Of a stretch of DNA of 64,000 bases, positions 37,301 through 64,000 are shown piece after piece. Position numbers and translations under genes: made by a program. The stretch's first letter is position 1; each line of letters starts with the position of its first letter. The DNA is from Syncephalis fuscata S228 (lineage: Eukaryota > Fungi > Zoopagomycota). A model generated the notes under the pieces. The model saw only the letters and a list, made by a program, of their open reading frames with translations. It made no database searches and was not told where the DNA came from. Where the stretch lies: positions 248,001-312,000 of the forward strand of contig JAHLTZ010000017.1 of the NCBI GenBank assembly GCA_025786725.1, in the 5' to 3' direction.

Positions 37301-40300
37301 CTGTGTCTGCTTATTACCATTGCTTGTCTTATTATGTTATTCTTTATTATCTTCTTTGGTAAACTTATTTGTCCGCATCAAAATATACAAACGCTACTTG
37401 AACTACAATCAACCAGCAATGGAACCAGTAGCCAAAACGCATTTATGGCCATTCGAGGCGAAGTATTCGATATACGTAAATTCCCCGCCCATCATACTGT
37501 AACCTATAATGACATTATTAAATCGGGTAAATATGCCGGTCAAGATGCATCGACGCAATTTCCACAGCAAGTATCAACACAATGTGATGGATTTGAAGAA
37601 AATGGCGTGGATAATACAATTGCCTTACAGAATTATACTGTACCTGGATCAAGCGAATATGCTCACGATTTCCGTTGGTGGAAGAACCCAAGTGCCAATA
37701 ATGTATCACCAGATACTTATAGTATATGGATGGAAATGATGCGTCGTTCTTATCGTGTTGCTTTAGTTGGCTGGGACGCAAAATATATTAAATCACAAGC
37801 ACAGGTAGCCGATAAGAAATGGGCCATTATCGATCAGCAAGTATTTGATTTGACCGATTATCTAAAGGGCAATGTATTCCGATTGACACCCGATGGCACA
37901 GTAGCCTCACCCAGTATTGAACGTAAATTTATGGATCCACGACTTGAATCGCTATTTATGCAAAATCCCGGTGAAGATGTTTCTAAACTATTCCGGTCCA
38001 TCTTTCGTCGTAGTGCTGATGCACGTCGTCGAATGGAGACTTGTTTGCGCAATCTATTCTTTGTTGGCGTTGTTGATTACCGTAATAGTTTCCGGTGTCA
38101 ATTTGCCAACTACATGTTGCTAAGTATATCTATTCTGCTAGTAGCAGTTATCTTCTTCAAGTTCTTGGCGGCCCTTCAGCTTACCGGTCGACGTGATCCA
38201 GAAGAACATGATCGATTTGTTGTATGTCAAGTGCCGTGTTATACCGAAGGTGAAGACTCGCTAAAAGAAACAATTGATTCATTAGCCGTTATGCGCTATG
38301 ATGATAAGCGTAAATTACTGTTTGTTATCTGTGATGGTATGATTGTTGGTTCCGGTAACGATCAGCCAACACCACGTATTGTATTGAATATCCTTGGTTC
38401 CGATCCTAATATTGACCCAGAACCATTAAGCTTTATTTCACTCGGTGATGGTATGAAACAGCATAATATGGGCAAGGTATATACCGGTCTATACGAATGT
38501 AGCGGCCATGTTGTCCCCTATATGGTGGTTGTTAAAGTGGGTCGACCCAATGAACGGGCCCGTCCTGGCAATCGCGGCAAGCGTGACTCCAGCTTATTTT
38601 AATGCGATTCTTTAATGCTGTTCATTTCGATGCTGAAATGACGCCATTAGAACTTGAAATGTATCACCAAATCAAGAATGTGATCGGTGTTGATCCCAAC
38701 TTTTACGAATACGTTCTTATGGTGGATGCCGATACAGTAGTGCTGCCTGATGCACTTAATCGAATGGTCAGTGCTATGTTGCACGATCAAAAGATCATGG
38801 GTATTTGTGGTGAAACTGAACTGGCTAATGCTAAAGCAACCTGGATTACTATGATTCAAGTGTACGAATACTACATTTCACATCATATGTCAAAGGCATT
38901 TGAATCGCTATTTGGTTCAGTTACGTGTTTGCCCGGTTGTTTCTGTATGTATCGACTACGTGCACCACATAAGGACCACCCACTACTCATTAACAATGCT
39001 ATTATTGATGAATACTCGGAGAATCGAGTCGATACGTTACATAAGAAGAATTTGCTGTCACTTGGTGAAGATCGTTACCTAACTACATTGCTACTTAAAC
39101 ACTTCCCTACTATGAAAACGTCATTTACTAGTGATGCACAGTGTAGAACAAAGGCACCGGATACGTGGTCGATTTTATTGTCACAGCGTCGTCGATGGAT
39201 TAATTCTACCGTGCATAATTTGGTAGTGCTCTTATCGCTGGATCGACTTTGCGGCTTTTGTTGTTTCTCTATGCGATTTGTCGTTTTTGTCGATTTATTG
39301 GCCACGATTATTCAACCAGCTACTGTTGTTTATCTAGCCTATCTAGCCTATATGGGTATTACTCAAGGCAGTGTTCTAATCTTTGTATCGCTTATGATGT
39401 TGGCGGCCATTTACGGTCTACAAGCCATCATCTTTTTACTTAAGCGTAAATGGGAACATATCGGCTATATGATTATCTCCATTATTGCGCTACCTGTCTT
39501 TTCGTTCTTTATTCCCGTCTATTCATTCTGGCACTTCGACGACTTTTCCTGGGGAATACACGTCTAGTTGTAGGTGGTGATCAAGGCGGTAAAAAGCACG
39601 TTGCCGCTACAGAAGGCGAGAAATTTGACCCACGTACTATTCCACGCAAGAAATGGACCGATTACGAACAAGAGCTATGGGAGAGTGGATCACAAGACTC
39701 GCATGCTACCCACCAGTCACGACAATCACGGGCACCTACTGTACGTTCCTATAGATCACGGGCCAGTATACATAGTCAAAGATCACAAGCAGCTGGCGGT
39801 AATGGCGGAGGGGCTCGATCTGTTTATGCCGCCACTATTCATGGTAATGGCAGTGTCTATAATGGACAGATGTCGGGTCAGTCCTATGCTGGATCAGTGC
39901 ATCAAAGACCATTTAGCGGCTACTCCACTGTATCAGTGCAGCATCATCCACAACATCCATCTATTGCCTATCATGATCCACCGGCTAGTGTTTACGGTGG
40001 TACTGGTACAGAATTCAGCTATGCCGCATCACCTCATCCGGCAATGCCTATGATGTCAACACCGTCACGACCCACTTCAATCTACAATGGTGGTGGTAAT
40101 GAGAGCCATTATGCCGGCTCAGTCATTGCTGGTATGGCTATACCAACGGATGATGAAATTCTCGCTGAAGTACGGCGTATTCTGGCCCATGCCGATCTTA
40201 TGACGGTAACAAAGAAACAAGTACGCGATGCATTATCAAGTGTATTTGGTACAGATATGCAACCGCGTAAAGAGTATATCAATCAGTGTATTGAGCATAT

Positions 40301-40319
40301 TCTACAAGGTCGACTCTAA
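34365..40319 (+). CDS. Class V myosin-motor chitin synthase (myosin head, cytochrome b5-like, GT2 chitin synthase, DEK-C), apparently intronless CDS
   Basis: P-loop [76 protein letters not shown] and [15 protein letters not shown]. Three single-base homopolymer deletions (about 34759, 38590, 39556) split the ORF. Confidence 0.95.
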
Positions 40320-44541: not shown

Positions 44542-45578
44542 GCTCCTAAGAATTAAAAAAAATGTTTGTGCGAATCGATCATGATAAGTTGTAATGGTTG
44601 GAGTAATACCAGTATTTACACTGCCATTCATATTGGAGTTATTTACACTTGTGCGTGAAATGGATTTGGTATGTACATTGACACAGTAATTAGCCAGAAT
44701 TGTTGATGTTATTACCCTATAAAATAAGTAAGAAGCGTGTTTTATGACTATTATTACTTACCAATCTATACTGAAAAAGTATTCTGAAAAACCTCCAAAC
44801 GAACTAGTCAATAAAAAACTAATACAAATGAGATTGCATAGTACAACAAGACACATTGTTTGGATGCCTTGCCGTGCCAAACGTCGCCATGCATCCGAGC
44901 CAAACTTGCGATATTGTTTGTAGACGATGTAGCAGAAAGACGCCGAAAAAAAGTATTGACAGGCGTTGTGGTAGCGACCCAGATCCACGATACAATAGGC
45001 GGATAGTCAACAACACAGCCAACAGCGTCGGCAGTGACAGCTGGCGAGTAAATCATTGAATTAATGCCGGAACCAAGCTGCGGTAATATACTAAGTACAC
45101 CGATAGTTAGAATCCACCGATTACGACGTAAGGCCAAGTAAGCTCGCTGCAATACAACGATACTGTTAATAAATACGGAGATAGTTATAATCCAAATACC
45201 AGACCAAACAAATGTTCGGCAGCCAAGTGTATCACTTAGCAATATTACCGCACAGGTTGCAGTAAGAGATACACCTAGAAGGGAAGTGAGCAAGCAACAC
45301 CACCCAGCAAGGCTTTTCGAATCATATCTAACTGCTCTAATAGTTTTGCGTAGGTTGTAGCAGAATATAATGGCTATTGCTAAATTTATTATAAACTGAA
45401 GATAGAATCCAGAAAGACGAGCGCGTATTAGTGCTTTTGTCGGCTTTTGACCATTATGATTTCTTAAAATAACATCGTATATGTTTAATTCGCCAAGCGG
45501 GTGTAGCGGAATACCGTACAACCTCGTAGCATTTTTTTCCCATTCTCTGTTCTCGTAGTATTTGTCTAGATCAGCCAT
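44530..45578 (-). CDS. Orphan GPCR-like 7TM protein, subfamily A copy 1
   Basis: 7 hydrophobic segments; GIPLHPLGELN, GWCC, GCR, LQRAY, GCVVDYP, YRKFGSDAWRRLARQGIQTM. Intron within the DW codon in TM7; frameshift in the A-run at about 44946. Confidence 0.8.
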
Positions 45579-45829
45579 GGACAATACAAATTATAAGGAT
45601 TGATATACAAAGCAAAAAGTAAAATTGCACAGTAAAAACGATGTAATATGAAATAAATATGTACTATGATTGATACAAGGATGATATGTACATAGGCAGT
45701 TTTAAACCTGTACGATTGTATCTAGTGTTGTCGGGCCGCGTGTACACACTGCAGAGTATTAGTGGCGCTTGTTCTTTGTATGCATAAACTGTAGATTTGG
45801 TCTGTGTAAATAGTGGCAGGCTAAGGCTT

Positions 45830-45837
45830 AACCGGTT
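45830..45837. promoter_or_regulatory. AACCGGTT palindrome (Grainyhead/CP2 consensus) about 250 bp upstream of 7TM A1
   Basis: Exact palindrome, repeated at a similar distance upstream of 7TM B2 (60687-60694). Confidence 0.4.
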
Positions 45838-45973
45838 TATTAAACAGCTGCCCCAGCAATTTAGATTTGCTTTAATATCTGATAGCAGCTAATTGATTTG
45901 GCAATAGTCTATTGTGTAATAGCACAAGACGCAAAATCATCACTTTTAAATATTAGTCACAAATTGATATGGC

Positions 45974-47014
45974 TTAGAAAATGGTCGAGTTTGACATCCT
46001 TGTATTTAGAAATTTTACATGAAAAGAAATAACTGTTTCTTTAATGTCGACCTGGGTAGTGGGGACGCTTTTCGAGCTTTTCAAAGCAGCTAGTGAACTT
46101 GCTACCACGCGCGCATTAAAACACATGTGGGCCAGCGCTGTTGTAGTAATTACACTAGATAGAACATTAGGTACTATACACAGCCATTATAATTGCTTAC
46201 CAATCAACGGTAAAAAACATCTCCGAAAATCCGTCAAATAGTTTTTCTACTACAATAACACTGCAAATGATGTTGCACAAGGCGACAAGGCACATTGTCT
46301 GAATGCCGTCTTGTGCCAAGCGCTTCCATGCGCTCGAGCCAAACCTACTATACTGTTTGTAGGAAACATAGCAGAATATGCCAGAAAATAAAGTATTGAT
46401 AGGTATGCTGGCTATAAGCCAATACCAAGGAACATATGTAGGATAATCGATTACACAATCATTATCGTCGTTGAACAAAGTAGGCGAGTTTGATAGTATA
46501 AAAAACCCAAAGCCCAGGTGAGGTGATATAAGCGCTGCCCCTAGAATGGCTATCCAGTATTGACGGCGTAGTGCAAGATAAGCACGTTCGAGCATTATTG
46601 TGCTATTCGACATAGCGGTAAGCGGTATCATTCAGATAAAATAGGTAGTAAGTCCTCGGCAGCTTGAAAACTCGCTTAACATCAATACTGAGCGCCACAC
46701 GCCATCGAATACACCCATAAAAGAGGAAAATAAACAACGCCAGGCAGACAGACTGTTGGGTTGATCGATGACAGCTCTTGTGGCAAAACGCAAACTATGC
46801 ACAAATATAAGAACTGCTAATGTATTAACAAAAACTTGTTTCTGTGTACTAGATACGCGTGTCTTAAGTAATTCCTCGGTCAGCAATTTATTATCAGAAT
46901 TGCTTGCCACTGCGCTGTATATGTTAATTTTACCTGATGGGTCTAATGGAATATTAGAAAAACTAATAGGATTATTTGACCAGTCTAGTCCTGGATTGTT
47001 GGTATTTTATCCAT
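45974..47014 (-). pseudogene. Orphan 7TM subfamily A copy 2, with in-frame TGA in TM3 (probable pseudogene)
   Basis: Family motifs (NIPLDPSGKIN, SCR, LERAY, DCVIDYP, AWKRLAQDGIQTM) are intact on both sides of the TGA at 46632-46634. Also a 5' homopolymer frameshift at about 47006. Confidence 0.65.
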
Positions 47015-47400
47015 TGGTATCAAAATACAAAATATAATTAAAAAAGAAGGAAGATTAGGCGCGTATAATAACAATTCAAGTAGAGACGGCTAAGAAGCAA
47101 GGGATGCTACAGTAGTTATAGTTGCGTTATCGCTACTTGACCGAACCTGTATAATTATGTATATTACCCGCATCACGTGTAGGCGAAAAAGCGTACTATT
47201 GGACCAGACCAAGTTTTGTGCATTTTGCGCATGCAATGCGGTCATATTAATCAGTTATAGTTTACTGCTTAATGAATACATTTCTGTGTAAAAGGATAAA
47301 AAGCTGCTTATGTTTTAATTAATTGTTTATATTATAGTAGTTTGTTACACGCATAATTTATATAATACGTGTTGGATGGATTATAAATGTTGTTAGCGTT

Positions 47401-48445
47401 TTAATTTCGAAACGATCTAAACATAGTCCCTTGCATAAACCACTCGTGTTGCGTAGTTATCGTTTCGTTGATGTCGGGTTTTTGATTGTAACGTTCATTA
47501 ATGCTTCGGATGCAGTCAAAGATCCCGATGATGTGTACATGTTAACACAATGATGTGCCAGGATTGTCGTAGTGATTACCCTGGCTGCAAAGTTAGCAGA
47601 ATGCACCATTAAATATTGATGTCTTACCAGTCAAAATTAAAAAAAGCGGGTGATATGTCACCGGCGGCCTTGAGTATTAGACAAGCACCGCAAATGATAT
47701 TGCACAACACGACAAGACACATGGTCTGGATCCCGTGTCGTGCCAGACGTCGCCATGCATCCGAACCGAATTTACGATATTGCTTGTAGACTATATAGCT
47801 GAATATTGCCGAGAAAAATGCATTGATAGGCATAATGGCTAAAAACCATAACCAGGCGACAAATCTCGGATAATGTGCAACGCAGCCACCATGATCTTCA
47901 ACAGTAACATAAGAAAATGCTATGGCCAACGGGCCAATACTTAATTCCAACAAAATGCATAATATACCGGCAATAGCTGTCCGACGCTTACGTTGCAAAG
48001 CCAAATGGGCTTGCTGAAGCACTGTCGTGCTATTACAGCAAATCGCCACTGTACCGGCACAAAGATTATACCAAACAAACTGACGGCAGTTTGCGTAATC
48101 CAGTACTACTAGCGTACTAGCCAAGCCTATAGAAGCGCCTAGTACAGAGGAAATAATACAGCACCATACGCCTATATTTTTTAACCGACTTTTGGCAGTT
48201 TGAATCGAAACATTAAGGTTGAGTATAAATATCATTGATAGCACAATGTTTACTACAATTTGAACTTGTAGGCCAGCTAGACGAACTCTTGTTGCTTCCA
48301 TGGTCAGTGTTTGATTATCTGTATTTTGTATTATTGCAGTATATGGACTCATTTCGCCCGATGGATGCAATGGAATATTAAATAACTTGACGGCACTCTC
48401 TCTCCATGTTTCTGATAAAAAACTGTTAGCTTGTAAGTCGTCCAT
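47401..48445 (-). CDS. Orphan GPCR-like 7TM protein, subfamily A copy 3
   Basis: NIPLHPSGEM, VWCC, NCR, LQQAH, GCVAHYP, AWRRLARHGIQTM and DW|intron. The 3' end is uncertain (47457 or 47401). Confidence 0.82.
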
Positions 48446-49897
48446 GTACAATAGACATAAACACAAACATGCACTTAAAAATTAGATATAAACGGGAATC
48501 CTAATAAATGATGATAGAAGACGGTACTGGTAATTAATTCACAAGAAAAGGAAGCTCGCTAAGGCCTAGACAGCTTTCACTTGCCTGTCCAGCTGTGTAT
48601 TACCCATTCAAATACTTATGCCGAACACGCAAGTCACGCCTTATAGTGATTGGTTCAAAAAACAGACAAAGCAGCAAATTTTGGATAGTATTTAAATCAA
48701 TCTATAGATATAAATAAAGCTATCTGGATAGCAACAATGCACCTTATGGGTATGTATACTTTAAGAAAGTACCGTATTGTTTAAGTCTGTTTCGAGAAAA
48801 AACAGTCCAAATGTAATTGTTGAGTGTAACTTTTATTATGTGCGACTTTATATTCATTATGTATAATCTAACTAATACGATTTGTTGCTATTTTTATTTA
48901 ATATCAACTGTATTGAACAATAATTATAACGGTACAGGTACAATCATATTGATAGCTATAATGTATTTGCAGTACAAAAGCAAATATTCTTGATAAAGTG
49001 TGCTATTATTACTATTATTGCACCTCAGTCAATAATATCGATTCAGATAATACGTCACATTATACATAAATAATAGCGTTTTTAATGAATGACATAATTA
49101 AATCAGGTATGATAATATATTTACAAAAATAATACAGATTAAATAGCACTACCATATTAACATTAAATTTATTTTAATATTCTTTGGCGTATATTTGAAT
49201 TGCGAACAAAAATAAACAAAGCTGATACATTGATAGTAATTTTAATTTGAAATGCTACCATACAAACACGCGGTTTCTTTGTTAGCACATGATGTTCAGT
49301 TCTTTGTTGTAGCAGCACGTGGATGTGCCTCGCCCAATTGATGTAGTAAAATACCAAGAAACGAATGGCATTCGCTCTTAGTTTGTATGCCTGCCACACG
49401 CACTTGTAATATACATTGTTATAATAGCTATATCAAGTAATAAAACGATCTATACAATACCAAAGGTGTATCTATAATATAGCATGTATGCACGTTGCTG
49501 TTGAAATCATTAACAAAATGAAATATTGTACTATTTTGAGCTATGCTGAATTCAATCACTAGACAAAGTGGTTTGTTCTAGACAATGGGTCTATTAAAAC
49601 TGTTTTTTTACAAATCAACTACGTCTTAAGGCTATCTTTTTATTTGACATAGTATTAATTCAGCGATAGCATTTCAAGATAAACCGTCGATACAGCAAAG
49701 CTAATGCTCCATACAATAAACAGACGACAAACTTTATCAAAATATTTATTTAATTATCTTTAAAGCATTTTTTATTGTGTTACTAAAATAAAACTCATCA
49801 AGACTTAATTACAGCTACAATGTGAGATTAAAAATTGTATTTATTTTAATATAATTATAGCGCATTTTTTATTTAAATAACTAAACTGTAGTATATT

Positions 49898-50954
49898 TCA
49901 ACGGCCTCTTTGAATGTATGATTGAAATAGCGTTTCAGTAGCGTTGGGTCCGTGGTAGGACGTGGCTATGTTTTAAAGTCATTAAAGCTATTACAAGTAG
50001 TTTTGAAATTTTTAGATGTTGCCATAGAACTTGCTGTTTTGCCAATTCTAATGCTGTGTATAGATAGAATGGTCGAAGTAATCAACCTAAACACAAGGTA
50101 AGATTTAGCTTATTATCTTTCTTTTGTTTTAACTTACCAATCAATGTTAAAAAAGAATTCGGCTTGATCTCCACCTATTTTTCCAGTAATAGTCCGCCGC
50201 ATAGTATATTACATATGACGATAAGACACATTGACTGTATACCATCGCGAGCCAAGCGCCTCCATGCATCCAAGCCAAACTTACAATATTGAGTATAGGT
50301 TACATAACAAAATATAGTTGAAAATAAAATATTAATAGGCATAATAACCATAAACCATAAAGGGGCCGTGAAATTATCGTAAATACACACGCATCCGCCT
50401 GCATCATCAGTTCCCGTATATGAAGTTGCAATTGTATAAAACGCAAAACTACTCTCTGGCAATATAAGCAAAATACCAACCATAGCCACCCAGCCTTTAC
50501 CACCCAGGGCTAGATAGGCTCGTTGAAGTACGGCAGTAGTATTGCACATTGTTCCAATAATGCCAGTTGTAAGTATATACCAGGCAAAAATTCGGCAATT
50601 ACCGTATGAACTTAACATCATTAACATGTAGACTATACCGACACTAGCTCCAAGGATTGATGAAATAAAATTGCACCAAGCTGCAATGTTGCTTTTTCGC
50701 TTTACAATAAGCTTAGCTGAGATATACGAAATGTATAAAAAGGCAAATAATAATAACATGTTGAAAAATAGTTGAACTTGGAACATAAACATCCGTTGTC
50801 TTACAACTTTCTCCACCGGCTCTTGACCATCCGTTTTTTTTACAACAGCATCATATGGATTCAGTTCACCTAAAGGGTGCAGCGGAACACCAAGAAGCTT
50901 GGTGGCATTTTCTCTCCATTTTTCATCAAAGCGGAAATTAATTTCGCGACTCAT
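49898..50954 (-). CDS. Orphan GPCR-like 7TM protein, subfamily A copy 4
   Basis: GVPLHPLGELN, AWCN, NCR, LQRAY, GCVCIY, AWRRLARDGIQSM and DW|intron. Frameshift in the homopolymer at about 50180; 3' end approximate. Confidence 0.8.
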
Positions 50955-51358
50955 AGACTTTGATATATATTTAATAAAGGTTAGAAAGAATAATAAAACA
51001 AATTACGAGTGGCGAGGAAATTGAAAGAAATGACTGCATCTAAAGCACGCGGATGTGTCATAATGCTAAGAGGTCAACTGCAGCTTTTTGCAATATCAAA
51101 AAACTGGTTTTACTTGACTGCAAAAGCCGGTCGTGTCGCTTTACTTATTGTCCCATCATTTTATCGCAAATTGACAGAGTATCTCGGTGGTATGCACTAG
51201 ATATTAATACTAACAGTTAAACATGGACATGTACTAAATAAGAAAATTTTAATGACATTGCTATTATATTATTTCATTTTTTATTTTTATTTTATGACCA
51301 TCTCTATTTAGATTATTAGACAATCATGGACAGATACGTGGTGGCGTGTATAATTAAA

Positions 51359-54241
51359 TTAAAGATATCCAGCTGTACTGATGGCTCTCGCCAAATTACG
51401 CACTAGCGCAACTCGGACCACCGACAGGCGCGAGGTAAGTAGATTTACTTTCTCGCTTGAATAATCCACACCAGTATCGTTGTCGGTATTATTTATGGGT
51501 CGATTCGTATTACGTGTTCGTTTGCCATGTTGATTTATAGCCAGAGCATCGCTTGATAGGTCAGTGCCAGTATCTGTGCGTTTTCTCGCCGACTGGTTTA
51601 CGTTAACAAGTTCTTCCAAACAGCGCATCATTTCGTATGTCTCCTCGGACGTGAATAATACTTGTTCATCTAGTTTAACATGAATAAGTCGTCTAGAACA
51701 TGATATGCAGGGATTATGTACCATCTAGCAATAATAGGGCATCCATAAGGAGAATAGGCCAGAAACTACGCGGCGCTGCGCCGGACGAGAAAAACGGGGC
51801 CAATGTACGAGCTGCACTCACGTAATCGCCACTCTGTTATTATTGGTATGATTATTCACATTAGCACTAACATATCACTGGCACCAACTACTTACCGCAT
51901 ACTCTTCGTGAAAACTGCGGTAATGTGATAAAAATGCCAATAAATCACATTGCTTCTGTGCCTCTTGATCTAAACTGTCAATAATCTCTATATTGACTAG
52001 TTCTCCTATAGTAATAGTAGTAATGTAAATATATAAATACAGCTATGCTGGTTTGACCAATTAGTACATACGATGTTCAAGATAATTATTTAGCAGTTGC
52101 TCCGTAACGGCTGATATACGCGATGGAAGACTAGCTCGCGAGTAATAAGCAATTGCCTGGGCTGGTCGTTGACGGGCTACATTCATACGAGCCCATGTCT
52201 AAATAAGCAGCCAATTAGTTTATTAGCCGTGCCATTATTATTATTATTATTATTATTATTTCTATTGATTACATACACGATAAATTGTCGACTTTTGTTC
52301 TACAAGTTGGTATTCATCACATATGGATAATAGTTGCTGTACTTGTCGTTCGTTTTTCAATGGCACACGTACAACTAACTGTAGGGTTATTACATCATCA
52401 GCAATACTGTAAATTGATTACACTCTATAACCTACTTGCTCCATACGTTCTCTTCCTTGTATTGGACACCAGTAAAGATATCCCATAGCCAATGGCCAGT
52501 AGGTAGCATTGTTCAGTTGTTCTGCGTATTCAACTAAGAAATATTCGTTTAAATTACAGGCATATCTATTGCACAGTCAGCTATTGCTTGTACGCGTATT
52601 TCCATGAACTTTAATTGTTCTAGCTACGTTACCCTTGGCTTGGCTGATCAAATAGATTAAGATAGTTGAACATGTCGGCCAAATGCGCCACTAACCATGT
52701 ATCCACATGACTACAATCACGAATGGCCTATAGTCATATCGTTGTAGCTCTTTTCAAATATAAAGCACTGATGCCACTTACTTGAGTGGCATTCTGTTGA
52801 ATAAGAGCCAATAATACTTGATCTAATGCTTTATTTTCCAATGAGCCATGATGGTCCACACAATCAGTGGCAAATTCACTATTTAATTCCATTAATATTT
52901 ACATTTATCCGACAATCAGTTCACTAATAATACATACCCGACAAGAGATCGACCGGCCAATGGACGACAAAGTACCAAAACACCAATCAATGATTCTAGC
53001 CAACTCGAACCCGATTGGATAATTTGCTTTTCATCACCAGTCAACATTAGCAACAAAGACTCAAGTTCATGTTTATATGGTAGTGTTGAGCTTTTAATAA
53101 GTGTTAGCTGATACCTATATAGTGGAAATATACCAATTTAGCCTATATATTCACGTATATTATCATTTGTTAATGCTTACCGGCCATCCTCCTGCCAGCC
53201 ACGCCACTGGGTCAGGAAATCGCCTTCAGTACGTAGACCAGCTCGTCGAGGCATCTTACGCAAATGAGCCGAGAGTTGTTGCAGCTGCGGCTGTTGTTGA
53301 TGTCCACCGTTAATGGTAGCCAATAAACGAGCTGCCTCATCCATCATACCACGTAGTAGACATTGCCGTAGTAGTGTCCAAAAGTGTTCCCCTGGCTGTG
53401 GTACCATGGTGGCAATCATTGCCTCAATGCTGGCCGGGTCTGGTCCTGGATAGTGCTCATTCAACCAACGGCATAGCGGTTCAGCTAATGGCTCGGTTGT
53501 TGTATGTTCAAGTAGCATCAATTCGCTAAGTTCTAGCACCATCGTGGCTACACGTACAAATGTGTGCTCAATGACATCGGCATCAGTTGCTTGATTTGTC
53601 GTCATTGATTGCAAACGACTGGCATGTCGCTTCAATGCACTACGATATTGACGTGATATATATCGAATCTCATCTAATCTTTTACGTGACAATGAGAATA
53701 TTGCCGAGCGTGGATCGTTGATATTGTTGCTACTAACATAGCCGGTCGTCGTCGTGACCGCGCCTGGTGTCGTTGAAGCAGGCAATTCTTCTTTTTGCAA
53801 GCTTTGCTGCATTTCTTTAAATATCACGTATGCATCTTGCACAAACTATAAAACCAGCCAATAAAGCAGCGTTTAACAAACAGACCTGTATTTATGTATG
53901 ATATGACTTACGGGAAAACGTGCGGCTGGCAGTCCCGGCAATTGCACAATATAGAGCGAGCGATCAGGCTCAAATAGATCTTTGGTCTATGAAATATTAA
54001 TCAATTAGCCGTATATAACTGGCTGTGCCTATCTAATTACCAGATCTTCGTCGGGTTTACGCGGTTTAGTACCTCCAACACAGATAGTAAACGCGCTATC
54101 AGTGCTGGAAGGCACTACCAACAAAGTACGTCCTCTACGTGCCCATTCTTTTGTTTTGCCCGCCTCAATAAGTGACGGATTCAACGTAAACACATCAGAG
54201 GTGGAATGTGCTCCACTCTGGCTTATTGTTTCCACTTCCAT
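51359..54241 (-). CDS. NUP85: Nucleoporin Nup85, multi-exon
   Basis: ISRQYRSAL, FWTLLRQCLLRGMMDEAARLL, LRKMPR..FLTQWRGWQE, SWLESLIG, WLVAHLADM, WPLAMGYL, LAFLSHYRSFH, APRSFWPILLMDA and VRVALVRNLARA resemble Nup85 family segments. Confidence 0.8.
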
Positions 54242-54387
54242 GACGGTGCTGGTAAAAAGAAGAACAATAATAACAATAACAAAGAAAATAAAGCTCTGAA
54301 TACAAAACGTGTTTTATTTATTTTAAACGTCATTCCAATATTAATTTACACTGTTTTTCGCGGTTACTTATTTACAGCTGTTTAGTA

Positions 54388-56977
54388 ATGGTACAGCCAC
54401 GAAAAAAGAATGAACAACGTCAAAAAGATGCAGTCGTTAGCAAGAAACCAAAGCCTACGCCGCTTTCGTTGGCAGACCATGTAGCTGTACAGTTAAATAA
54501 GGTGCGATAGACAATATTTATTATGGCTATTGACTAATAAAGTAAATTCAATTGGTATAGACTATTGATTTAGCACCAAAGCGTCGTAATATACGCCATG
54601 AATCGTCTACAAAGCATAAAAAGACCATGACAGCAGAGAAGACAACGATAATACGAAAGAAGATGCTAGTTAAACCGCGTAATCCAATGGATGGAACAGC
54701 ACCGCGAGTTACGTATCGTGGATTTCAACGAAAAACACCAAAATTAAATAAGCAAATTAGTTCAATTAAACGACGGATATTGGCTGGTAGAGCAGAAATA
54801 CGTTCATTAATTGCCCAAAGACTTGATAAAAAAGCAATTAAAAGTGGTTTAGTTATTGGTAAATCATTCAATAAATTAACAACGATAAAAGCCATATCAC
54901 CTATTCAAAATGTATGGTTGGAACAAGAATTGCCTTCAAGTATAAAAACGCCAATTGTTGATAATAATGCTAGCAGCTCAGATATTTCATCAACACCTTT
55001 GGTAGAGCGGCGTAAAACTCGTCGAGGCGCAAAAAAGAACAAAAAGAAAGTAAAAGATGACTTCGTATCTACTGCTAGCCATAATCAAGCGACAAAAGTC
55101 GATTGTCTAGCAGCTATGCCTATAGAAATACGGTATACATTAGCTCATACACTAAGCAATAATCGGGGCCTAACTAAAAGGTGGGCTACAAACAAATTGT
55201 ACGACAAAATAAGCAGCGAATTGATATAGCTGTTAGTTATTGCGATCAATGGGTCTCTACTGAATTAGATACCAGCGTGACAATACTAATGGCCGAATTG
55301 ATTCGTTATCAAACGAGAAAACTACAACAGGTTCCAATTAAGGTAAGCTTATATTATAGTTTATGTTGCTGTATTTAATACAGATTAAGTGTAGGCGAAA
55401 ATACGAAAGCGATATGTTATTGGATTTAAAGAGTCTTTACGCACGTTGCTATTGGATAAAGCCCGCTGCATTATTATGGCAAAAAACATTGAATATATCA
55501 ATCCAAGCGGTATGAAGATTACATTTAATAATATATGTTTATAGGATATTAATCGATAAAGATAGAAGAGCAACTGGATCCACTTGTTGTGCAAATACAA
55601 CAACAATGCCATCAACGATCGATTCCATTAGTATATTCAATGACACGACGTCAATTGGGATCGGCTATTGGTGGTGCTCGAGGCCATCGAACGGGTGGCG
55701 TAGGCTGTATAGCACTATTAATGATTGATGGTGCCGAATCTTTGTATGATCGTGTATTGACACTGGCTGATCAAGGAAGGCATTATTGGCAAGACTACTT
55801 TTGTTCCCTACGTCCAGCCACCGATGCTTTAACACCATGGAATAGCTACGGTGAAACGCCTGTGTGGCTAGCTTCATGGCATGGGTATTCTAACGATGTC
55901 CTTTGTAAATGTATAGATAATGGATGGTCAGTGGATACACGACGACAGTCTTATCAAAGTGATGCTCCTAGAGACTGGACACCATTAATGGCTGCATCCT
56001 ATCGAGGACATGCTCATATATTGTCAATACTATTGAGAAAAGGAGCACAAGCGAATGTAAAAGATCAAATGGGCAAGTCAGCCTTGTTGTTGGCTATTGA
56101 ACAAGGGCACGTATCAGTAGTACATGAACTATTGAAATTGGCAGCAACATTGATTGATGTAAATATAAAAGATAACGATGGAAATACGGCATTACAAATA
56201 GCTATTCAAGGCAAGCATATACAGATTGTTCGTGCTTTATTGGAACAAGATCAGTTAAACATAAGTGATACATGTGATGATCGGGTTAATGAAAAGATAG
56301 CTATGTCTAATCCATTACTACTGACCATTCAATTAAGTTTACATGATGTTCTATTTGAATTATATCAATACTACGAGCAACGATGGATAGTTGAAATGAC
56401 TGAAATAGTCACTGCTACATTTACACCTAGGAAAATGATGCTATTTCTAAATAGCCGATTACCACTGGATGATCAAGGTCGAAATCCTTTTATACTGGCC
56501 TGTGCCATTGGCAATTTAACGGTGTGTCAAACACTGTTGATCTGTATGAGTAGGCCTATCTCTATACCAATGCCCGGTGCTCAGAAACGACGATGGAAAA
56601 TAGATCGAGCAGAGCGGCAACGCCAACTAATCAATCAACCAGACGAGCAAGGAAGAACTGCGCTATGGTGGGCATCGGCTAATGGACACATATCCCTTGC
56701 AAGTTGGTTATGCGGAAACTCGCTTGATCATTTACAAATAGATCGAGAATTAAAAGATCAAGAAGGAAAGACGGCATCAGATGTTGCAGCATTATATTAC
56801 AAGGATTGGCTGAACAATACAGCAAATGAAAAATTAAAAGATGTGGCTATGAAGAATCAAAAGAAACAAACGGATTCACGTATACAACAACTCGTTTATG
56901 ATATTTGTCGTACAATTGCTAAACCATCTTCTAAAACTTTGCTTCCAAGTAATAAAAACGACAATAATGATGATTAA
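54388..56977 (+). CDS. SECISBP2: SECIS-binding protein 2 (SBP2/SECISBP2)-like SID + L7Ae domain fused to ankyrin repeats
   Basis: RNPMDGTAPRVTYRGFQRKTPK..SSIKRRILAGRAE resembles the SBP2 SID. SYCDQWVSTELDTSVTILMAELIRYQTRKLQQVPIKAKIRKRYVIGFKESLR..IPLVYSMTRRQLG..DGAESLYDRVL resembles the SBP2 L7Ae RNA-binding domain. Ankyrin motifs follow (TPLMAASYRGH, SALLLAIEQGH, TALQIAIQGKH, TALWWASANGH). Introns at 54502-54560, 55343-55394 and 55510-55565; homopolymer frameshift at about 55178. Confidence 0.85.
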
Positions 56978-57083
56978 TTAGCAGCATAATCATAATAATA
57001 ATAATAATAATGTAAAAACACATTTATATTTTAATAAATTAGTGATTATTATCACCATTGATCATTATTGTTTATTTGTATTA

Positions 57084-57803
57084 TTAAAACCCAAAACGTT
57101 CTTTTAACGATGACATCTCCTCATGGATTCGATGGCGTAATCGGCCATGTTTACCGTGCATTTTGTCGCTCCAATAACTGCCGGTTTCTTCGACAGTTGT
57201 AGTTTCCGTGTTCTTACCATCCTTTAGCGTTGTTGTTGTCTTTGTCACGGTAACAGTCTCAGTTCCATTTAATCGATCAAGCTCTCCCATAAGCGATTGA
57301 AGTCGTTCGGATGTTTCGCGGCATCGATTGCGCAACTCTTCACCGTTGCCTTCTTTTCGTAACTGCCGTACACGGCGCTTCATTTTACGTGTCTTTGCCT
57401 TTTCCTCGTCATCGCTCGAGTCTGACGACGATGAATCCGATGATGATGCGTGCTCGTCAACACCTTTCTCCTTCTTTGCCTCGACCTGATCAAAGGCCAG
57501 ATGTAGCACTTTCAAATCTTTTTCCAATAATTCATCCAGCTCTTTTTTAACGTTGTTTAGCCGTTCGTTTAGCTCTTCTCGCTCGTGTTCTACAGAGCGC
57601 TTAATAAGACGGCGGCGCCAGTGGCGGCGATAGTGTTTAAATGCACGTACAAGGCCAATACCGGCTGCCGTGGCTAGTGTGGCTGATACAACTGCTAGCA
57701 CCACATGTTTGCCCTTGATAGTATGACCACGAACGGTTCCTACTGGTCGGTCGAGTGCACGGGAGGCTGAGTCGGCCGCGTTGGTAAGTGCCTTGGGCGC
57801 CAT
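57084..57803 (-). CDS. N-terminally membrane-anchored coiled-coil protein, possibly BAG-domain-like; intronless
   Basis: One TM segment (VVLAVVSATLATAAGIGLV) followed by a basic stretch, a heptad helix, an acidic Ser run and ERLQSLMGELDRL (similar to the BAG E-x-L-x3-L-x2-LD helix). Confidence 0.6.
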   Translation of the reverse strand: MAPKALTNAADSASRALDRPVGTVRGHTIKGKHVVLAVVSATLATAAGIGLVRAFKHYRRHWRRRLIKRSVEHEREELNERLNNVKKELDELLEKDLKVLHLAFDQVEAKKEKGVDEHASSSDSSSSDSSDDEEKAKTRKMKRRVRQLRKEGNGEELRNRCRETSERLQSLMGELDRLNGTETVTVTKTTTTLKDGKNTETTTVEETGSYWSDKMHGKHGRLRHRIHEEMSSLKERFGF

Positions 57804-59221
57804 AGTAACTGTCGGAGAATGAAAGGGAGATAGAGGTGCAGTGGCTGTAAAAATGATAGTGGTATGTACTGGTAGTGAATAAGGAATTGACGGAGAAGCA
57901 CAGCCCGAGTACACAACGTCATCTCGCCTCTTTCATCGGCATATGGAGTAGTGAATCTTTATTGGGATAATGACGACGATCTAAACCAATCATGGTTAAG
58001 CATTGCCCTATTCTGCATAGCCCCATCTAAGAATGGCAGTATTATAGCAAGTTGTAAATTAAATAAAAGTAATAATCTGCTATTCCAGCTATTGATAAAT
58101 AATAATAATGATTTTAATAGTAATCAGTCAATGCACAATAGAATGATACATAATTAAATAAATATGCAAGAAAAGAAGATGAATAAATAAAAAATATATG
58201 CGTACTGGATAATAAATCAACAATGATGAGTATTTGATGACTGATGTCACTCCCACCCACCATCATGTTCAATAGATTGGATGTTATTAAATCTAATTAT
58301 TTGACCACTAAAATATATTAAGTAATCAATGTATTATTTAATATAGTGTAATAGCCTTAATGCAAATAAAATAATAAAATAAAGTTATAGTATTAATGTT
58401 ATAATAAAATAGCAAGAGTTTAGCTGAATCAAATATAATTAATTGTAATATATTGTTTTCTATTGTCATTACCGTTAGTGTGGCAATCAACATCAAAGTG
58501 CTTGACGAAAGACGGCATGATTATAGTGCTGCTCATTATGGTTACTTTACTTGTCGTTATCATTTATTGTAAAAAGTCCATTTGGCATCAGTTGGACAAA
58601 TGCAATCTAACAAATTAAAGAACATTACATGATTGTACTTAACTCGTATGAATTACGAAAATAATGCGGACAACCGAGGCTTAAATGGACATATGTCAAA
58701 ACAAACACACATGTTACTATCATCAGCATCATACGACATTCCATAAATATCGCTGAAACATAATCGTATAGACACTGAACTATAAATGCTGGCAATAAAT
58801 TATTTATTATTACACAAAAGAGTTGATTTAGTTTATCTAATAACTAAAAGAGCATAAAATGCCACGGTTTGCTCGTGCACTTGCACCATTAAGAAACTAG
58901 CCATAATTTCAGATAACAAACAGCGCCCTACTAAGAATAGCCGTTTGGCTAAAGCTGGTTTCACGAACTAAACGCTCAATAAAACCGGCTTGAATACTCC
59001 GGCCATGCGGAATCATCCATGTGTAAAAGCGGCCTTGCCAAACAAAGATTACCGCCAAATGTGCTCCAATTCGCTCGTATCGTTCAATGCATAATAGAAC
59101 TACATCTTACTACCCAAGACTTTCTACTATGCTATTTTGTTTCTGTAACACCATCGGTCACTATTCAACAATCTTTTAGCTGATATATGTGCACAGCCAT
59201 TGACTACATACTATAAAAACG

Positions 59222-60202
59222 ATGGTTCACAATGACACAACCGGAGATATAAATATCTCCGAGTATATATGGCAGATGCATGACGATAAAACAAATCTTC
59301 AGCGACGATATGTAAATTTTAACTATTTGCTAGTGTTGATAGTTACCATGGCTGTTATCTTTATACGCAATACCATTGGCGTCGGGATAATAGCCATAAA
59401 GTATCCATATAAACTTGCACCATGGTGCTGTTTCTTTGCAAATATCTCAGGAGCAATAATAGCTGTAGGCATTAGTACACCGGCTTTCTTTGCCCATGGT
59501 CCATCTTGCAACACACTTGTATGGGCAGTTGTAGCTGTACTTCCCTTTTCAAGCACTTTGATCAACATTATGCTATTTGAACGAGCCTATCTTGCTTTCC
59601 GGCGCTCTTTATGGTTTCTCTTGCTGGGTATATTATTTATTGTAATACCAGGCCCTACATATTTCATTGCCGCACGTTGGTCCTCCACTCCCAGACTTAA
59701 TGAGCGATATGGATGCTATTTGGACTATCCCCAATACCTGGCATATATTCGCCTTGTTGTAGATCTACCGTGCAACATTGTATGCTCTGTAGTATTCTCC
59801 ATAGTAATCTATCGGCAGTATAAAAGATACCGTGATGACTGCTGGAAACACCTGGCCCGTAATGGGATAATTACTATGGTTTAGTTATCGTTTCGAACAT
59901 GCTATGCTTTTTCTTAAATCTAAGCGGTGTTTTTGAAGAAGCCAGCAGTTATTTGTACATGGGAGACTGGTAAGTTCACATAACCGCACTTTTTAACATT
60001 TATTGACACATCTGAACCAAGGATAATAACAATTACTTTGCTTACAGAAAGTACAAAAAAATTGTATTTTGTATCGCAGTCCGCAACAGTAAAAAAAACA
60101 TCTGTCAATCCTAACTTGCAGCTAAACGTTTATTCAACAGAATTTGGACTGGAAACCGATTTTAGTATCTATCCAACAGAAATGCCAACAACACGAGACT
60201 AA
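59222..60202 (+). CDS. Orphan GPCR-like 7TM protein, subfamily B copy 1
   Basis: GDINISEY, KLAPWCC, GPSCN, FERAY, GCYLDYP, CWKHLARNGIITM and DW|intron (59970-60021). T-run deletion at about 59880. Confidence 0.82.
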
Positions 60203-60686
60203 ATAAAACAAGTGTATTTATTGAACTACTAAAGTTGAATCATTACCCAATGGGTTATTATAAGTTTACAAATATGCTGGTAATTAATGTAGAGCATGCC
60301 ACTCAAAAGACATTAAAGCCAGAAAGTATAGACATGTGATTCAATGGCCTTGTACCTCTATGCTTACTAGCAAGTATGTGCTTTAGATTTTTATAAAAGT
60401 GATTTATTCTACTAAATCATTTCAATGTTTTGCTGTAATAAGACAAAACTAGAAAACCATTAAATGATCCATTATTGAATTTTAAAATTAATACTAAGTG
60501 TATTAGAGTAAAGCTCAGACCTATCAGCATAATATCAACTATTTACAATAAAGCCTATTAGAATTCCAAGTCTTGCATAACTGTAATATCACTACTGACT
60601 ATTGTATTTGAATTTACTACAACACTTGCTTAGATTTGAGTAAGCATTAATTTTATAGTCATCTAAATTTTAGAATTGCTCTATTA

Positions 60687-60711
60687 AACCGGTTTTATTG
60701 AAAAACTGGTT
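60687..60711. promoter_or_regulatory. AACCGGTT + AACTGGTT pair (Grainyhead/CP2-like) about 250 bp upstream of 7TM B2
   Basis: Two adjacent matches to the consensus, one exact and one near-exact. Confidence 0.4.
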
Positions 60712-60943
60712 TTTGGCATGCAAGCATATAAAGCAGCTCATACTCAAAAGCAGTTCAACTAGCAGCCAAGTCCTTTGTACATGTGCTCCTTTTTCATCTA
60801 ATATTTAACATACGTATTCTATTCTGTTTTGTAAATCGACCTTTACTATCATTGTGTTTTATATTAACAAACTAATTAAATAAGCGCCAATAACTATTCA
60901 ATTAATATCTATATACAGTCATTGATTGCGCTGCATAAAAACA

Positions 60944-61927
60944 ATGGCGTTCAACGATACAGCTGGCGATATAAACATATTTGAGTATATATGGCAAGCA
61001 CATGACAATGAAGCAATTCTTCAGCAACGTTATAAAATTTAAATTTTCAGTTCTTATTGTTTATTATAGGAGCGGTAGTTTTTTCAACTAATGCCATCAA
61101 AGTTGGAATAATAACAGCAAAATATCCTTATAAACTTGCACCGTGGTGCTGTCTACTTGCAAACACAACAGGAGCGCTATCTAATATATGCTTTGGAATA
61201 TTCACTTTTTTTACCTACGGTCCAACGTGCCATGCAGTTGCATGGGCCACTGTGACATCATTGACAATATCTACCGTACTGACTAATATTATGCTTCTTG
61301 AACGGGCTTATCTTGCATATCGCCGTTCCAAGCTATTCATCTTACTGGGAATATTTCTCATCTTAGTACCGGCACCTATATATATGATTGCTATATGGTG
61401 GTGTGCGGATATCGGGCTTAGCAATCGTTATGGTTGCTATATGAAATTTGCTTTCTATCTTCCGTACTTCCGTCTTCTTCTCGACCTTCCATGCAATCTT
61501 GTATGCTCTGCGGTATTCTCTACGGTTATTTATAAGTATTATAAAAAGTATCGTGATGATTGTTGGAAACGCCTAGCTCGTAATGGAATTATCACCATGA
61601 TCCTGGTTATTTTATCCAATATAATATGCTTTTTTTTGAATTTAAGTAATGTTTTTGAAGAGGGAAGTGGATTTCTTTACGCGGCTGATTGGTAAGTAAA
61701 TATGAGGCATTAATGAGCGCTTTTTGTTAACATTACTTATTCTAAGGTTTATAACAATCATGCTGCTTACAGAAAGCACCAAAAACTTGTACTTTGTATC
61801 GCAGACAGCAACGGCCAAGAATTTTCCTACTAAATCTTGCTTGAAAAAGAAAATTTATTCTGTAGATTCGGTGCAAGAAACTGAAATTAGCATGTGGCCA
61901 ACAGAGCTTCAGAGCATGAGACGTTAA
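60944..61927 (+). CDS. Orphan GPCR-like 7TM protein, subfamily B copy 2
   Basis: GDINIFEY, KLAPWCC, GPTCH, LERAY, GCYMKF, CWKRLARNGIITM and DW|intron. Frameshift at about 61035-61045. Confidence 0.82.
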
Positions 61928-62531
61928 ATAAAACTATGTTATTACAGTTTTTCCAAAAAAGCCATAACAAAATGACTAAGCGATAGATCAATCTTGTAGC
62001 AATTTATATCGTCTGTTACTTTTGCTATACAAATAGTTATTTAACCGATAGCTTTGTCTAATAGTTAGAATAATAGAATGTAATACACCAATTGACTATT
62101 TGTGTAATAATTGGTACTGTTTAATAAAACAGATGCATTAAATATAATGTATATATGAGCAAAGTAAAATGGACTGCTACTTTTGTTTTTTGTAAATAAT
62201 TTAATTAGTGGCTGTTTTACGTATAAATAAACAAACTTCTTTTTTACACGTTTTTCTACAAATATAACAATCAGAATTATTCACACTACAGTGCTAAAAA
62301 TTAAATTATTAACATTAACAAGTATAATTATAGCAATTCGTACTATTTGGATTGCTTTACAATTAATGAGGATTTATGTTGAAAATATAGTTGTTTAAAT
62401 ATCAGAGAATTGAAAACTATTGTAATGTATTTAAAACATGGTCTTGAGATTAATCTCAAGTAGCATCATATATTCTTAAATGTAATGCTATTTGAATATC
62501 ATATGATAGACAATTTTGATTTCTTTGTTTT

Positions 62532-63472
62532 CTACCTTTCTATTGACGCCTTAGATAATTGTACAGAGGCTAGTTTGTTCGGACTTTTTTGACTATTATA
62601 ATGGTAAGCACTATTAGATGTATTCTTTAATTGAAAAGTACTTTTCACCAGCAGCGCAGTTGTGGCAGCCCTATATTTGCAAATTAGCTTTGATTTTCAA
62701 CTTTCAATTTTTAATACTTGCCAATATATTGTACTAATTACAAGGCTGAATTGAGAAAACAAATAAATGATGTTAAAAGCAATGCAAAATACATTTAAGA
62801 GTATCGCTAAAATGGACGTTCTTATGCTGTTGCTGAATATTTTTGTCCAACAACCTTTTCCATATCGGCAATACCGACGACGTATAAGAACGCCAAATGC
62901 TATAATAAATACCAAATTGATGGGGATATCGGCAATAGATCGAATATAAACTAGCATTGGCGGATAAATAATGCTGCAACCGAAAGACGGGAATATAGTA
63001 AAGGACACTGTTTGTCCAAATACTAGCAGAAAAGTTGGAGCCGGTAGCATCAACAGTATTATGCCTATGACCAGTATTAAACGATCACATTTGTATGCTA
63101 AATAGACGCGCTCTAATAAAAACGCATTTACACACAGTGTTGCTATAGTAAAGCCAAAGGTTAGACAATACGCCACTGTTTTGCATGAAGGGCCGCTTGG
63201 AAAGTAAAATGGAACAAGTGTTCCGCCAGTTATGGCAATCCCGGATAATGTTGTTGTTAAACAGCACCAGTGGGCAAGCTTATCAGGGCGGCTGATAACT
63301 GTTTTTGCAGAGTAATAGAAGCAATGTAGAAAAATAGCAAATAAAAATACGCTACCAATAGTTTGGATGTGAATGCCAGTCTATGGTGGCGATACATGCT
63401 CAAACTATCAGTCTGTATATGTAAATACTCGTAGATATTCATTTCACCGGATAATTTATTCTCGTGCTTCAT
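62532..63472 (-). CDS. Orphan GPCR-like 7TM protein, subfamily B copy 3 (divergent)
   Basis: GEMNIYEY, KLAHWCC, GPSCK, LERVY, GCSIIYP and CWTK. Intron at the same TM7 Trp codon but with a GC donor (about 62720); frameshift at about 63345. Confidence 0.75.
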
Positions 63473-64000
63473 AATTGCTAAAGATAACGCTAGAGATATT
63501 GTCGTAATAATACACAAATTAGATAGCTTTTAATGGAATTAAAGAATTGCAATGGAGAGAGGAAATAAAGCAACACGACAGATAAGGAGCAAATGCCAGA
63601 GCAGGAGGGCGGTATATAAACAGCTGAGTGACTTGAACAGATAGTTGATGCTTACAATGTTGCACATGGTGTGCTTAGGTTGTTAACAGCTCCAATATTG
63701 TTAAATGTAACGCATCTTTCAAAGAACTAAATGAGGCATGGCAATTAATCTATTGCTATTGGCCAATGCGTGTGGATACCGTCACACTCTCGGTGTCTCC
63801 GCTCATTTGACTCCGAGCATGCACCTTCTCCGGCTTGTCTTTACACGATGCTGCATGTCAATGGCTCAAGGCATTACAATTCATATGCGTGTAGAACCGG
63901 AATTGCTTGTTATTGTGTACGTGTCAAGAGCGATTTTATTGTCATCTGATCTTACACTAATTTAGCGAAGACATCGAATGCAACGCAACTTGCATGTACA

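What the first reader, a model, noticed from the sequence alone, without database searches (positions are those of the whole stretch)
54388..56977. Fungal SBP2 (selenocysteine-recoding factor) homologue fused to ankyrin repeats
Seen: SID-like and L7Ae-like segments with SBP2 spacing, including the L7Ae Gly/Glu (RYVIGFKES; animal RLVLGLREV). The end of the L7Ae domain and about 6 ankyrin repeats share one stop-free exon (55566-56977), so the fusion is not a gene-model artefact. Established: SBP2 binds SECIS hairpins to recode UGA as Sec; nearly all fungi lost the Sec machinery, which is retained only in a few early-diverging species; canonical SBP2 has no ankyrin domain. Inference: either this lineage uses Sec with an unusual SBP2 architecture, or an orphaned SBP2 became a K-turn RNA-binding adaptor that recruits partners through the ankyrin repeats.
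Basis: partly seen in the sequence, partly recalled or inferred. Interest (0 to 1): 0.88.

Follow-up and report, generated by a model that had tools for sequence, protein, structure and literature searches.

The report
Fungal selenocysteine factor with ankyrin tail
This gene from the fungal parasite Syncephalis fuscata is a true SBP2, the protein that lets cells read a stop codon as selenocysteine, and its ankyrin-repeat tail is shared by every complete fungal SBP2 I found and by none of the non-fungal ones, so the few selenium-using fungi appear to run this machinery with an extra part.

Summary
The window is Syncephalis fuscata (Zoopagales). A five-exon, 788-codon gene encodes SID core, RFQDR-like motif, L7Ae domain (best solved relative SBP2, E 2.6e-14; eL30 5.5e-5) and 7-8 ankyrin repeats, the junction lying in one exon. 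The fusion is not lineage-specific. It occurs in S. plumigaleata, Thamnocephalis, Paraphysoderma, two Gonapodya, Bifiguratus and two Smittium, all nine complete fungal sequences among the 150 best SBP2 hits, and in none of the other 141. Bifiguratus adelaidae and Gonapodya prolifera are published selenocysteine users. Shared intron positions, an orthologous first repeat and a fungal SID variant point to one fusion early in fungal evolution. All domains are under purifying selection. This makes the orphan-repurposing reading unlikely and suggests Zoopagales use Sec. tRNA-Sec, eEFSec, SecS and selenoproteins could not be searched in this genome, so Sec use is inferred. The ankyrin's partner is unknown; a docking role in the recoding complex is my best guess. 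I found no paper describing the architecture. Verdict: new variant of a known protein.

The parts
54388..54501 (+). Exon 1; ends in a motif (LSLADH) that resembles the SBP2 QLDL motif
   Evidence: 64-71% identical in S. plumigaleata and Thamnocephalis; the Thamnocephalis N-terminal query aligns to the QLDLG region of animal-type hits
54561..55180 (+). Exon 2: SID core plus low-complexity linker
54675..54809 (+). SID core (NP.D..AP...RGFQR.....K....KRRIL.GR), fungal RG[FI]Q variant of the RGK motif
55237..55342 (+). Exon 3: N-terminal part of the RNA-binding domain with SYCDQ (FRDY-like) and RYQTR (RFQDR-like)
55395..55509 (+). Exon 4: L7Ae core with the Gly and Glu equivalent to SBP2 G676/E679
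55566..55807 (+). Exon 5, first part: second half of the L7Ae domain and its long C-terminal helix
55841..56815 (+). Exon 5: ankyrin domain, 7 helix pairs plus a half repeat. Repeat 1 (55841-55940) carries a fungal-SBP2-specific signature; a basic insert lies at about 56567-56638 before repeat 7
55566..56977 (+). Whole last exon, intron-less, ending in TAA; the equivalent last exon is also intron-less in six other fungi
54242..54387 (.). 146-bp gap to the head-to-head Nup85 gene (minus strand, start 54241); this arrangement is conserved in S. plumigaleata and Thamnocephalis. Probably a shared promoter; context only

Best explanation
This is the SBP2 (SECISBP2) orthologue of Syncephalis fuscata, and the ankyrin domain is an inherited feature of fungal SBP2, gained once before Chytridiomycota/Monoblepharidomycota, Blastocladiomycota, Zoopagomycota and Mucoromycota separated. 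SHOWN: gene structure, SBP2 orthology, SID and RNA-binding motifs, the same fusion in eight other fungal sequences including published Sec users, purifying selection. FROM ESTABLISHED KNOWLEDGE: the L7Ae domain binds the kink-turn of a SECIS hairpin in selenoprotein 3' UTRs; the SID raises that affinity and primes the ribosome; eEFSec delivers Sec-tRNA to UGA. INFERRED (about 0.85): S. fuscata and its Zoopagales relatives still recode UGA as Sec. INFERRED, WEAKEST STEP (about 0.5): the ankyrin repeats continue from the last helix of the RNA-binding domain and serve as a docking surface, with repeats 1-4 as the core, for a protein of the fungal recoding complex, most likely fungal eEFSec or a ribosome-bound factor. 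The stated confidence is for the whole reading, with the identity of the partner left open.
For: Best PDB relative is SBP2 at E 2.6e-14 against 5.5e-5 for eL30 and 0.16 for Snu13; Thamnocephalis orthologue E 1e-21 to SBP2. SID core present; the SID is unique to SBP2 proteins and RFQDR is needed for Sec insertion but not for SECIS binding (PMC2746813). All nine complete fungal hits carry L7Ae plus ankyrin; none of the other 141 of the best 150 does. B. adelaidae and G. prolifera have full Sec machinery, and in 1197 fungal genomes bona fide Sec machinery co-occurred with tRNA-Sec (10.1101/314781). RBD intron positions are shared and the last exon is intron-less in seven fungi. A profile of repeat 1 built without the tested lineage scores it 27-38 bits against at most 14.5 for about 117 unrelated ankyrin proteins. 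Fungal monophyly of the RNA-binding domain is not rejected (p-AU 0.49; seven of nine rows group at 90/93). S. fuscata vs S. plumigaleata: pN 0.13-0.30 in SID, RBD and ankyrin against 0.41 in the linker, with pS 0.5-0.8. Repeats 1 and 7 are nearly as conserved as the RBD (0.34 and 0.33 vs 0.37). AlphaFold2 models of RBD plus ankyrin: pLDDT 75, pTM 0.67-0.70.
Against: No tRNA-Sec, eEFSec, SecS, PSTK, SPS, selenoprotein or SECIS was shown for any Zoopagales genome; the 64-kb window has none, which is uninformative for a whole genome. No partner or activity is shown for the ankyrin. S. plumigaleata keeps only about four repeats, so the distal half is dispensable there. Smittium repeat 1 was not recovered by the leave-out profile and Smittium falls outside the fungal group in the free tree. 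Only the best 150 of 678 hits were inspected, so a fungal SBP2 without ankyrin or a non-fungal one with it could be missed. pTM on a nine-sequence alignment is weak evidence for rigid packing.
Confidence: 0.72

Rival explanations
1. The protein is a working SBP2, but the ankyrin domain is accessory. It serves mRNP assembly, localisation, stability or selenium/redox regulation, or merely caps the RNA-binding domain, and is not needed for the recoding step.
For: Non-fungal SBP2 works without it (PMC2746813). The distal repeats are lost in S. plumigaleata. Middle repeats are poorly conserved (0.18-0.24).
Against: It is kept in every complete fungal SBP2 over four phyla, and repeat 1 has near-invariant surface residues. 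No partner for an alternative role was found.
Confidence: 0.3
2. Zoopagales have lost Sec, and the orphaned SBP2-ankyrin protein survives as a general kink-turn RNA adaptor.
For: Sec machinery was not shown in this genome. Sec loss is frequent in fungi (at least 10 losses). An ankyrin domain could give a second function that outlives Sec.
Against: The fusion predates any such loss, since published Sec users have it. Sec-specific SID and RFQDR-like motifs are conserved in three Zoopagales species. No hit identified among the best 150 came from the many sequenced Sec-less fungi (30 hits were looked up), and the published survey found machinery only with tRNA-Sec.
Confidence: 0.12
3. Ankyrin repeats were fused to SBP2 several times independently in fungi.
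For: Ankyrin repeats are promiscuous domains. Smittium is not recovered by the leave-out profile and sits apart in the free tree.
Against: Same fusion point, same intron-less last exon, collinear repeats with the same late insert, and an orthologous first repeat in four lineages. One clade is not rejected.
Confidence: 0.05
4. Gene-model or assembly artefact, or an eL30/Snu13/Nhp2 paralogue beside an unrelated ankyrin gene.
For: The assembly shows apparent indel errors in a nearby gene. A false-looking EFR3 fusion exists in the Bifiguratus model.
Against: The junction is inside one reading frame in seven independently assembled genomes. SBP2 scores nine orders of magnitude better than eL30, and the SID is present.
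Confidence: 0.01

Closest known systems
SBP2 / SECISBP2 (mammalian; PDB 7zjw chain B)
   Same: Domain order QLDL-like motif, SID core, linker, FRDY-like and RFQDR-like motifs, L7Ae with G676/E679 equivalents.
   Different: No long N-terminal regulatory half. The SID has RG[FI]Q where 71 of 73 non-fungal hits have RGK. About 325 aa of ankyrin repeats follow the RNA-binding domain.
SBP2 of published Sec-using fungi (Bifiguratus adelaidae OZJ04102.1, Gonapodya prolifera KXS16090.1; Smittium simulii PVU95764.1, S. megazygosporum PVV00852.1)
   Same: Same L7Ae plus ankyrin architecture, same intron positions, same first repeat. These species or genera are in the fungal Sec survey (10.1101/314781); that the two Smittium species are among the nine in the journal version is from memory.
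   Different: The preprint reports these SBP2s only as highly divergent and never mentions ankyrin or Zoopagales. The SID is degenerate in Gonapodya.
SECISBP2L (SBP2-like)
   Same: Shares SID and L7Ae; automatic annotation labels two fungal hits 'SBP2-like'.
   Different: SBP2L is an animal paralogue or form with its own motifs. These were not tested here, and the fungal gene is best treated as the single fungal co-orthologue.
Other L7Ae proteins (eL30, Snu13/15.5K, Nhp2, archaeal L7Ae)
   Same: Kink-turn-binding fold with the conserved Gly.
   Different: They are small single-domain proteins without SID or RFQDR, and score far lower (E 5.5e-5 or worse).

Membership tests
SBP2 (SECIS-binding protein) family | L7Ae domain closer to SBP2 than to eL30/Snu13/Nhp2, with G676 equivalent | tested here: met
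   tested by score, since no outgroup tree could be built (no referenced eL30/Snu13 sequences)
SBP2 (SECIS-binding protein) family | SID core motif (K517-R543) upstream of the RNA-binding domain | tested here: met
   (profile from non-fungal hits finds window 54675-54809 and the orthologues); definition from PMC2746813
SBP2 (SECIS-binding protein) family | RFQDR(654-658)-like motif N-terminal to the L7Ae core | tested here: met
   RYQTR aligns to RFQDR; R/x-F-Q-x-R in the other fungi
SBP2 (SECIS-binding protein) family | Binds SECIS RNA and supports UGA-to-Sec recoding | not testable with these tools
   needs binding and incorporation assays
Sec-utilising organism (eukaryotic Sec trait) | tRNA-Sec, eEFSec, SecS, PSTK and SPS in the same genome | not testable with these tools
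   The fungal genome is not searchable here, and I had no referenced eukaryotic query for these genes. The window and the 10-kb flanks of the orthologues hold none.
Sec-utilising organism (eukaryotic Sec trait) | Selenoprotein genes with in-frame UGA and SECIS | tested here: inconclusive
Ankyrin-repeat domain | Tandem 33-residue helix-loop-helix repeats above Pfam cutoffs | tested here: met
Fungal SBP2-ankyrin type (defined here) | Single origin: shared last exon, shared first-repeat signature, one clade | tested here: met
   met for Zoopagales, Bifiguratus, Gonapodya and Paraphysoderma; Smittium supported by intron positions and domain order only
SECISBP2L (SBP2-like paralogue) | SBP2L-specific motifs (QQTD, DSGY, SEIS, TPVS, EPIS) | not tested
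   motif names; no search made
eL30 / Snu13 / Nhp2 | Stand-alone L7Ae protein of about 100-160 aa, best matching its own subfamily | tested here: not met

The most novel reading that the evidence does not exclude
The ankyrin module belongs to a fungus-specific recoding mechanism. It recruits a second factor, or presents a surface, that reads a non-canonical signal, which would explain why 11 of 16 fungal selenoprotein genes have no recognisable SECIS. It might also be the adaptor to the fungal ribosome that human Sec machinery lacked when it failed to work in yeast.
Probability: 0.15. Interest if true: 0.88.

Novelty: new variant of a known kind. Interest (0 to 1): 0.66.

Why it matters
SBP2 is the specificity factor of eukaryotic selenocysteine recoding and is described as SID plus L7Ae, with variation at the N-terminus. 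A C-terminal interaction domain kept across four fungal phyla is a structural difference that the fungal Sec preprint did not mention, although it flagged divergent SBP2 and missing SECIS elements as unexplained. It gives a simple deletion test for that puzzle and bears on efforts to build Sec insertion in yeast. It also nominates Zoopagales mycoparasites (two Syncephalis species, Thamnocephalis) as Sec users and provides a marker, the RG[FI]Q SID plus first ankyrin repeat, for finding more. Caveats: databases already list the two domains automatically, and Amses et al. 2022 (PMC9457484) mapped Sec to 11 early-diverging genomes in a figure I could not read, so Sec use in these species may already be on record.

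Tried and rejected
The joined five-exon 788-aa model was not searched, aligned or folded. A profile search for more SBP2-ankyrin proteins was flooded by generic ankyrin proteins and missed several of its own query members, so it says nothing about distribution. Rfam, ARAGORN and a CxxU/UxxC scan of the window found no tRNA-Sec, SECIS or selenoprotein, and flanks of six orthologues had no Rfam hit and no listed Sec genes. Foldseek gave only generic ankyrin and DARPin matches, no donor family. A tree against eL30/Snu13/Nhp2 was not built for the same reason. P0012, next to Smittium in the tree, is a non-ankyrin SBP2 ORF of 751 aa with the RGK-type SID, probably long-branch attraction. Quaeritorhiza SBP2 has the fungal SID but its contig ends just after the RNA-binding domain, so it cannot be tested. 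The journal version of the fungal Sec paper and the selenosome structure paper were not held. A search for SECIS binding protein + ankyrin + fungi returned no paper.

Full report
Identity of the locus. A search with the start of the last exon returned one identical protein, annotated 'ankyrin repeat-containing domain protein [Syncephalis fuscata]', on contig JAHLTZ010000017.1 of GCA_025786725.1. S. fuscata is a mycoparasite of the Zoopagales (own knowledge; PMC10386755). The neighbours are Nup85, head to head, and a small unannotated gene downstream.

Observation. The gene has five exons (54388-54501, 54561-55180, 55237-55342, 55395-55509, 55566-56977) with GT-AG introns of 52-59 nt and consistent phases, giving 788 codons. 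All five exons match exons in S. plumigaleata and Thamnocephalis sphaerospora, which validates the model without transcripts. NCBI's model starts in exon 3 and lacks the SID. Exon 4 hits Pfam L7Ae and exon 5 hits ankyrin at E 1e-37. The joined model itself was not searched or folded; searches were by exon or by database protein id.

Family. Against the PDB the RNA-binding region matches SBP2 at E 2.6e-14 over 128 residues, then eL30 at 5.5e-5 and Snu13 at 0.16. In that alignment RYQTR pairs with RFQDR(654-658) and the Gly and Glu pair with G676 and E679. Donovan and Copeland (PMC2746813) state that the SID is unique to SECIS-binding proteins and that the RFQDR region is needed for Sec incorporation, not for SECIS or ribosome binding, and is not conserved in other L7Ae subgroups. 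A SID profile made only from non-fungal hits finds a single place in the window, 54675-54809, and the matching places in both relatives. The protein is therefore SBP2 by sequence features; activity is untested.

Distribution of the fusion. A full HMMER search with the RNA-binding domain gave 678 hits, of which 150 were listed. Nine carry ankyrin repeats after the domain and the other 141 do not. The nine are S. fuscata, S. plumigaleata, T. sphaerospora, Bifiguratus adelaidae, Gonapodya prolifera, Gonapodya sp. JEL0774, Paraphysoderma sedebokerense, Smittium simulii and S. megazygosporum. A tenth fungal hit, Quaeritorhiza, is cut by its contig end. None of the other hits I looked up was named as fungal, though many carry no name. 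B. adelaidae and G. prolifera are among the species shown to hold full Sec machinery, and that survey found bona fide machinery only together with tRNA-Sec (10.1101/314781). So the fusion is not a mark of an orphaned gene; it is what SBP2 looks like in these fungi.

One origin. In seven genes mapped, the introns in the RNA-binding domain sit at the same positions and the last exon, always intron-less, carries the second half of L7Ae and the whole ankyrin block. The repeats are collinear, including a basic insert before the late repeats. A profile of repeat 1 built without the tested lineage scores Zoopagales, Bifiguratus, Gonapodya and Paraphysoderma at 27-38 bits against at most 14.5 for about 117 unrelated ankyrin proteins; Smittium is too divergent to be recovered. 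In a 41-row tree of the RNA-binding domain seven fungal rows group at 90/93 and the two Smittium rows lie apart with weak support; one fungal clade is not rejected (p-AU 0.49), which does not prove it (32 non-fungal rows were picked by hand from the 147-row tree, and P0003 was left out as partial). The fungal SID reads RG[FI]Q where 71 of 73 non-fungal hits read RGK. An intron-less block in intron-rich genomes would fit capture of a retro-copy or a bacterial ankyrin gene; that is inference, and no donor was found.

Selection and structure. Between the two Syncephalis species pN is 0.23 in the SID core, 0.13-0.20 in the RNA-binding domain, 0.23-0.30 in repeats 1-4 and 0.41 in the linker, with pS near saturation. 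Across fungi repeats 1 and 7 are nearly as conserved as the RNA-binding domain. S. plumigaleata ends after about four repeats, followed by AT-rich DNA and the next gene, so the proximal repeats are the core. AlphaFold2 gives an L7Ae fold whose last helix leads into seven or eight helix pairs (pLDDT 75, pTM 0.67-0.70); with nine sequences this is only suggestive of a fixed arrangement. In repeat 1 the conserved Glu and aromatic residues fall at positions that form the binding face in canonical ankyrin repeats (own knowledge of the repeat consensus).

Mechanism. Most likely the L7Ae domain binds the SECIS kink-turn, the SID engages the ribosome, eEFSec brings Sec-tRNA (established for animal SBP2), and the ankyrin repeats dock a protein of the fungal recoding complex. 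The first steps carry over by homology. Sec use in S. fuscata is inferred at about 0.85 from retained Sec-specific motifs and the published co-occurrence. The docking role is about even odds against an accessory role in assembly, localisation or regulation. No Sec gene, tRNA-Sec or SECIS was found in the window or flanks, which is expected for so small a part of a genome and is not evidence either way.

Prior knowledge and novelty. The fungal Sec preprint never mentions ankyrin, Syncephalis or Thamnocephalis. It reports a SECIS for only 5 of 16 selenoprotein genes and ties this speculatively to SBP2 divergence, and notes that human Sec machinery did not work in yeast. No held paper joins SECIS-binding protein, ankyrin and fungi. 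Amses et al. 2022 report Sec in 11 early-diverging genomes across most phyla, but the species are in a figure that is not held, so Sec use in Zoopagales may be known. The journal version of the fungal Sec paper was not available. The verdict is a real, probably undescribed domain variant of a known recoding factor, general to the fungal SBP2 sequences sampled, with a direct deletion test. Interest 0.66.

Noticed in passing
window 34326-40319 (+): A myosin-motor chitin synthase-like gene is split over reading frames near 34808, 38600 and 39560 with no room for introns; probably single-base assembly errors.
   Followed up: partly
window 44808-63517: At least six related multi-pass membrane ORFs, resembling an expanded receptor-like family, with no meaningful Pfam match; similar-sized unannotated genes are called in L001.
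   Followed up: partly
window 57084-57914 (-); L002 13030-13737; L003 about 10970-11710: Small gene with a predicted membrane anchor, coiled coil and acidic stretch, tail to tail with SBP2; a similar gene lies at the same place in S. plumigaleata and a gene of like size in Thamnocephalis. No Pfam family above cutoff.
   Followed up: no
L003 10099-10812: S. plumigaleata SBP2 stops after about four ankyrin repeats (TGA, then TAA two codons later); the distal repeats are absent from the locus.
   Followed up: partly
L007 10001-15425: The Bifiguratus model OZJ04102.1 joins EFR3 to SBP2 across a longer intron, probably a gene-model fusion.
   Followed up: partly
L001 10001-11689; L003 10001-10812: NCBI models of both Syncephalis genes omit the SID exons and are named only 'ankyrin repeat protein', which hides them from name-based searches for SBP2.
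   Followed up: yes
proteins P0029, P0040 (L008): Gonapodya SBP2 has only a degenerate SID (basic half) although G. prolifera has the largest reported fungal selenoproteome.
   Followed up: partly
window 878-1381 (-) and 9798-10280 (-): Two divergent protein-kinase-like ORFs share an identical N-terminal stretch, suggesting a local duplication.
   Followed up: no
window 14829-16178 (+), 18647-19180 (-), 21940-23136 (-): Ordinary genes by inspection: glycogen phosphorylase-like, Sas10/Utp3-like C-terminus, RING-H2 membrane E3 ligase-like (from memory of the families, not searched).
   Followed up: no
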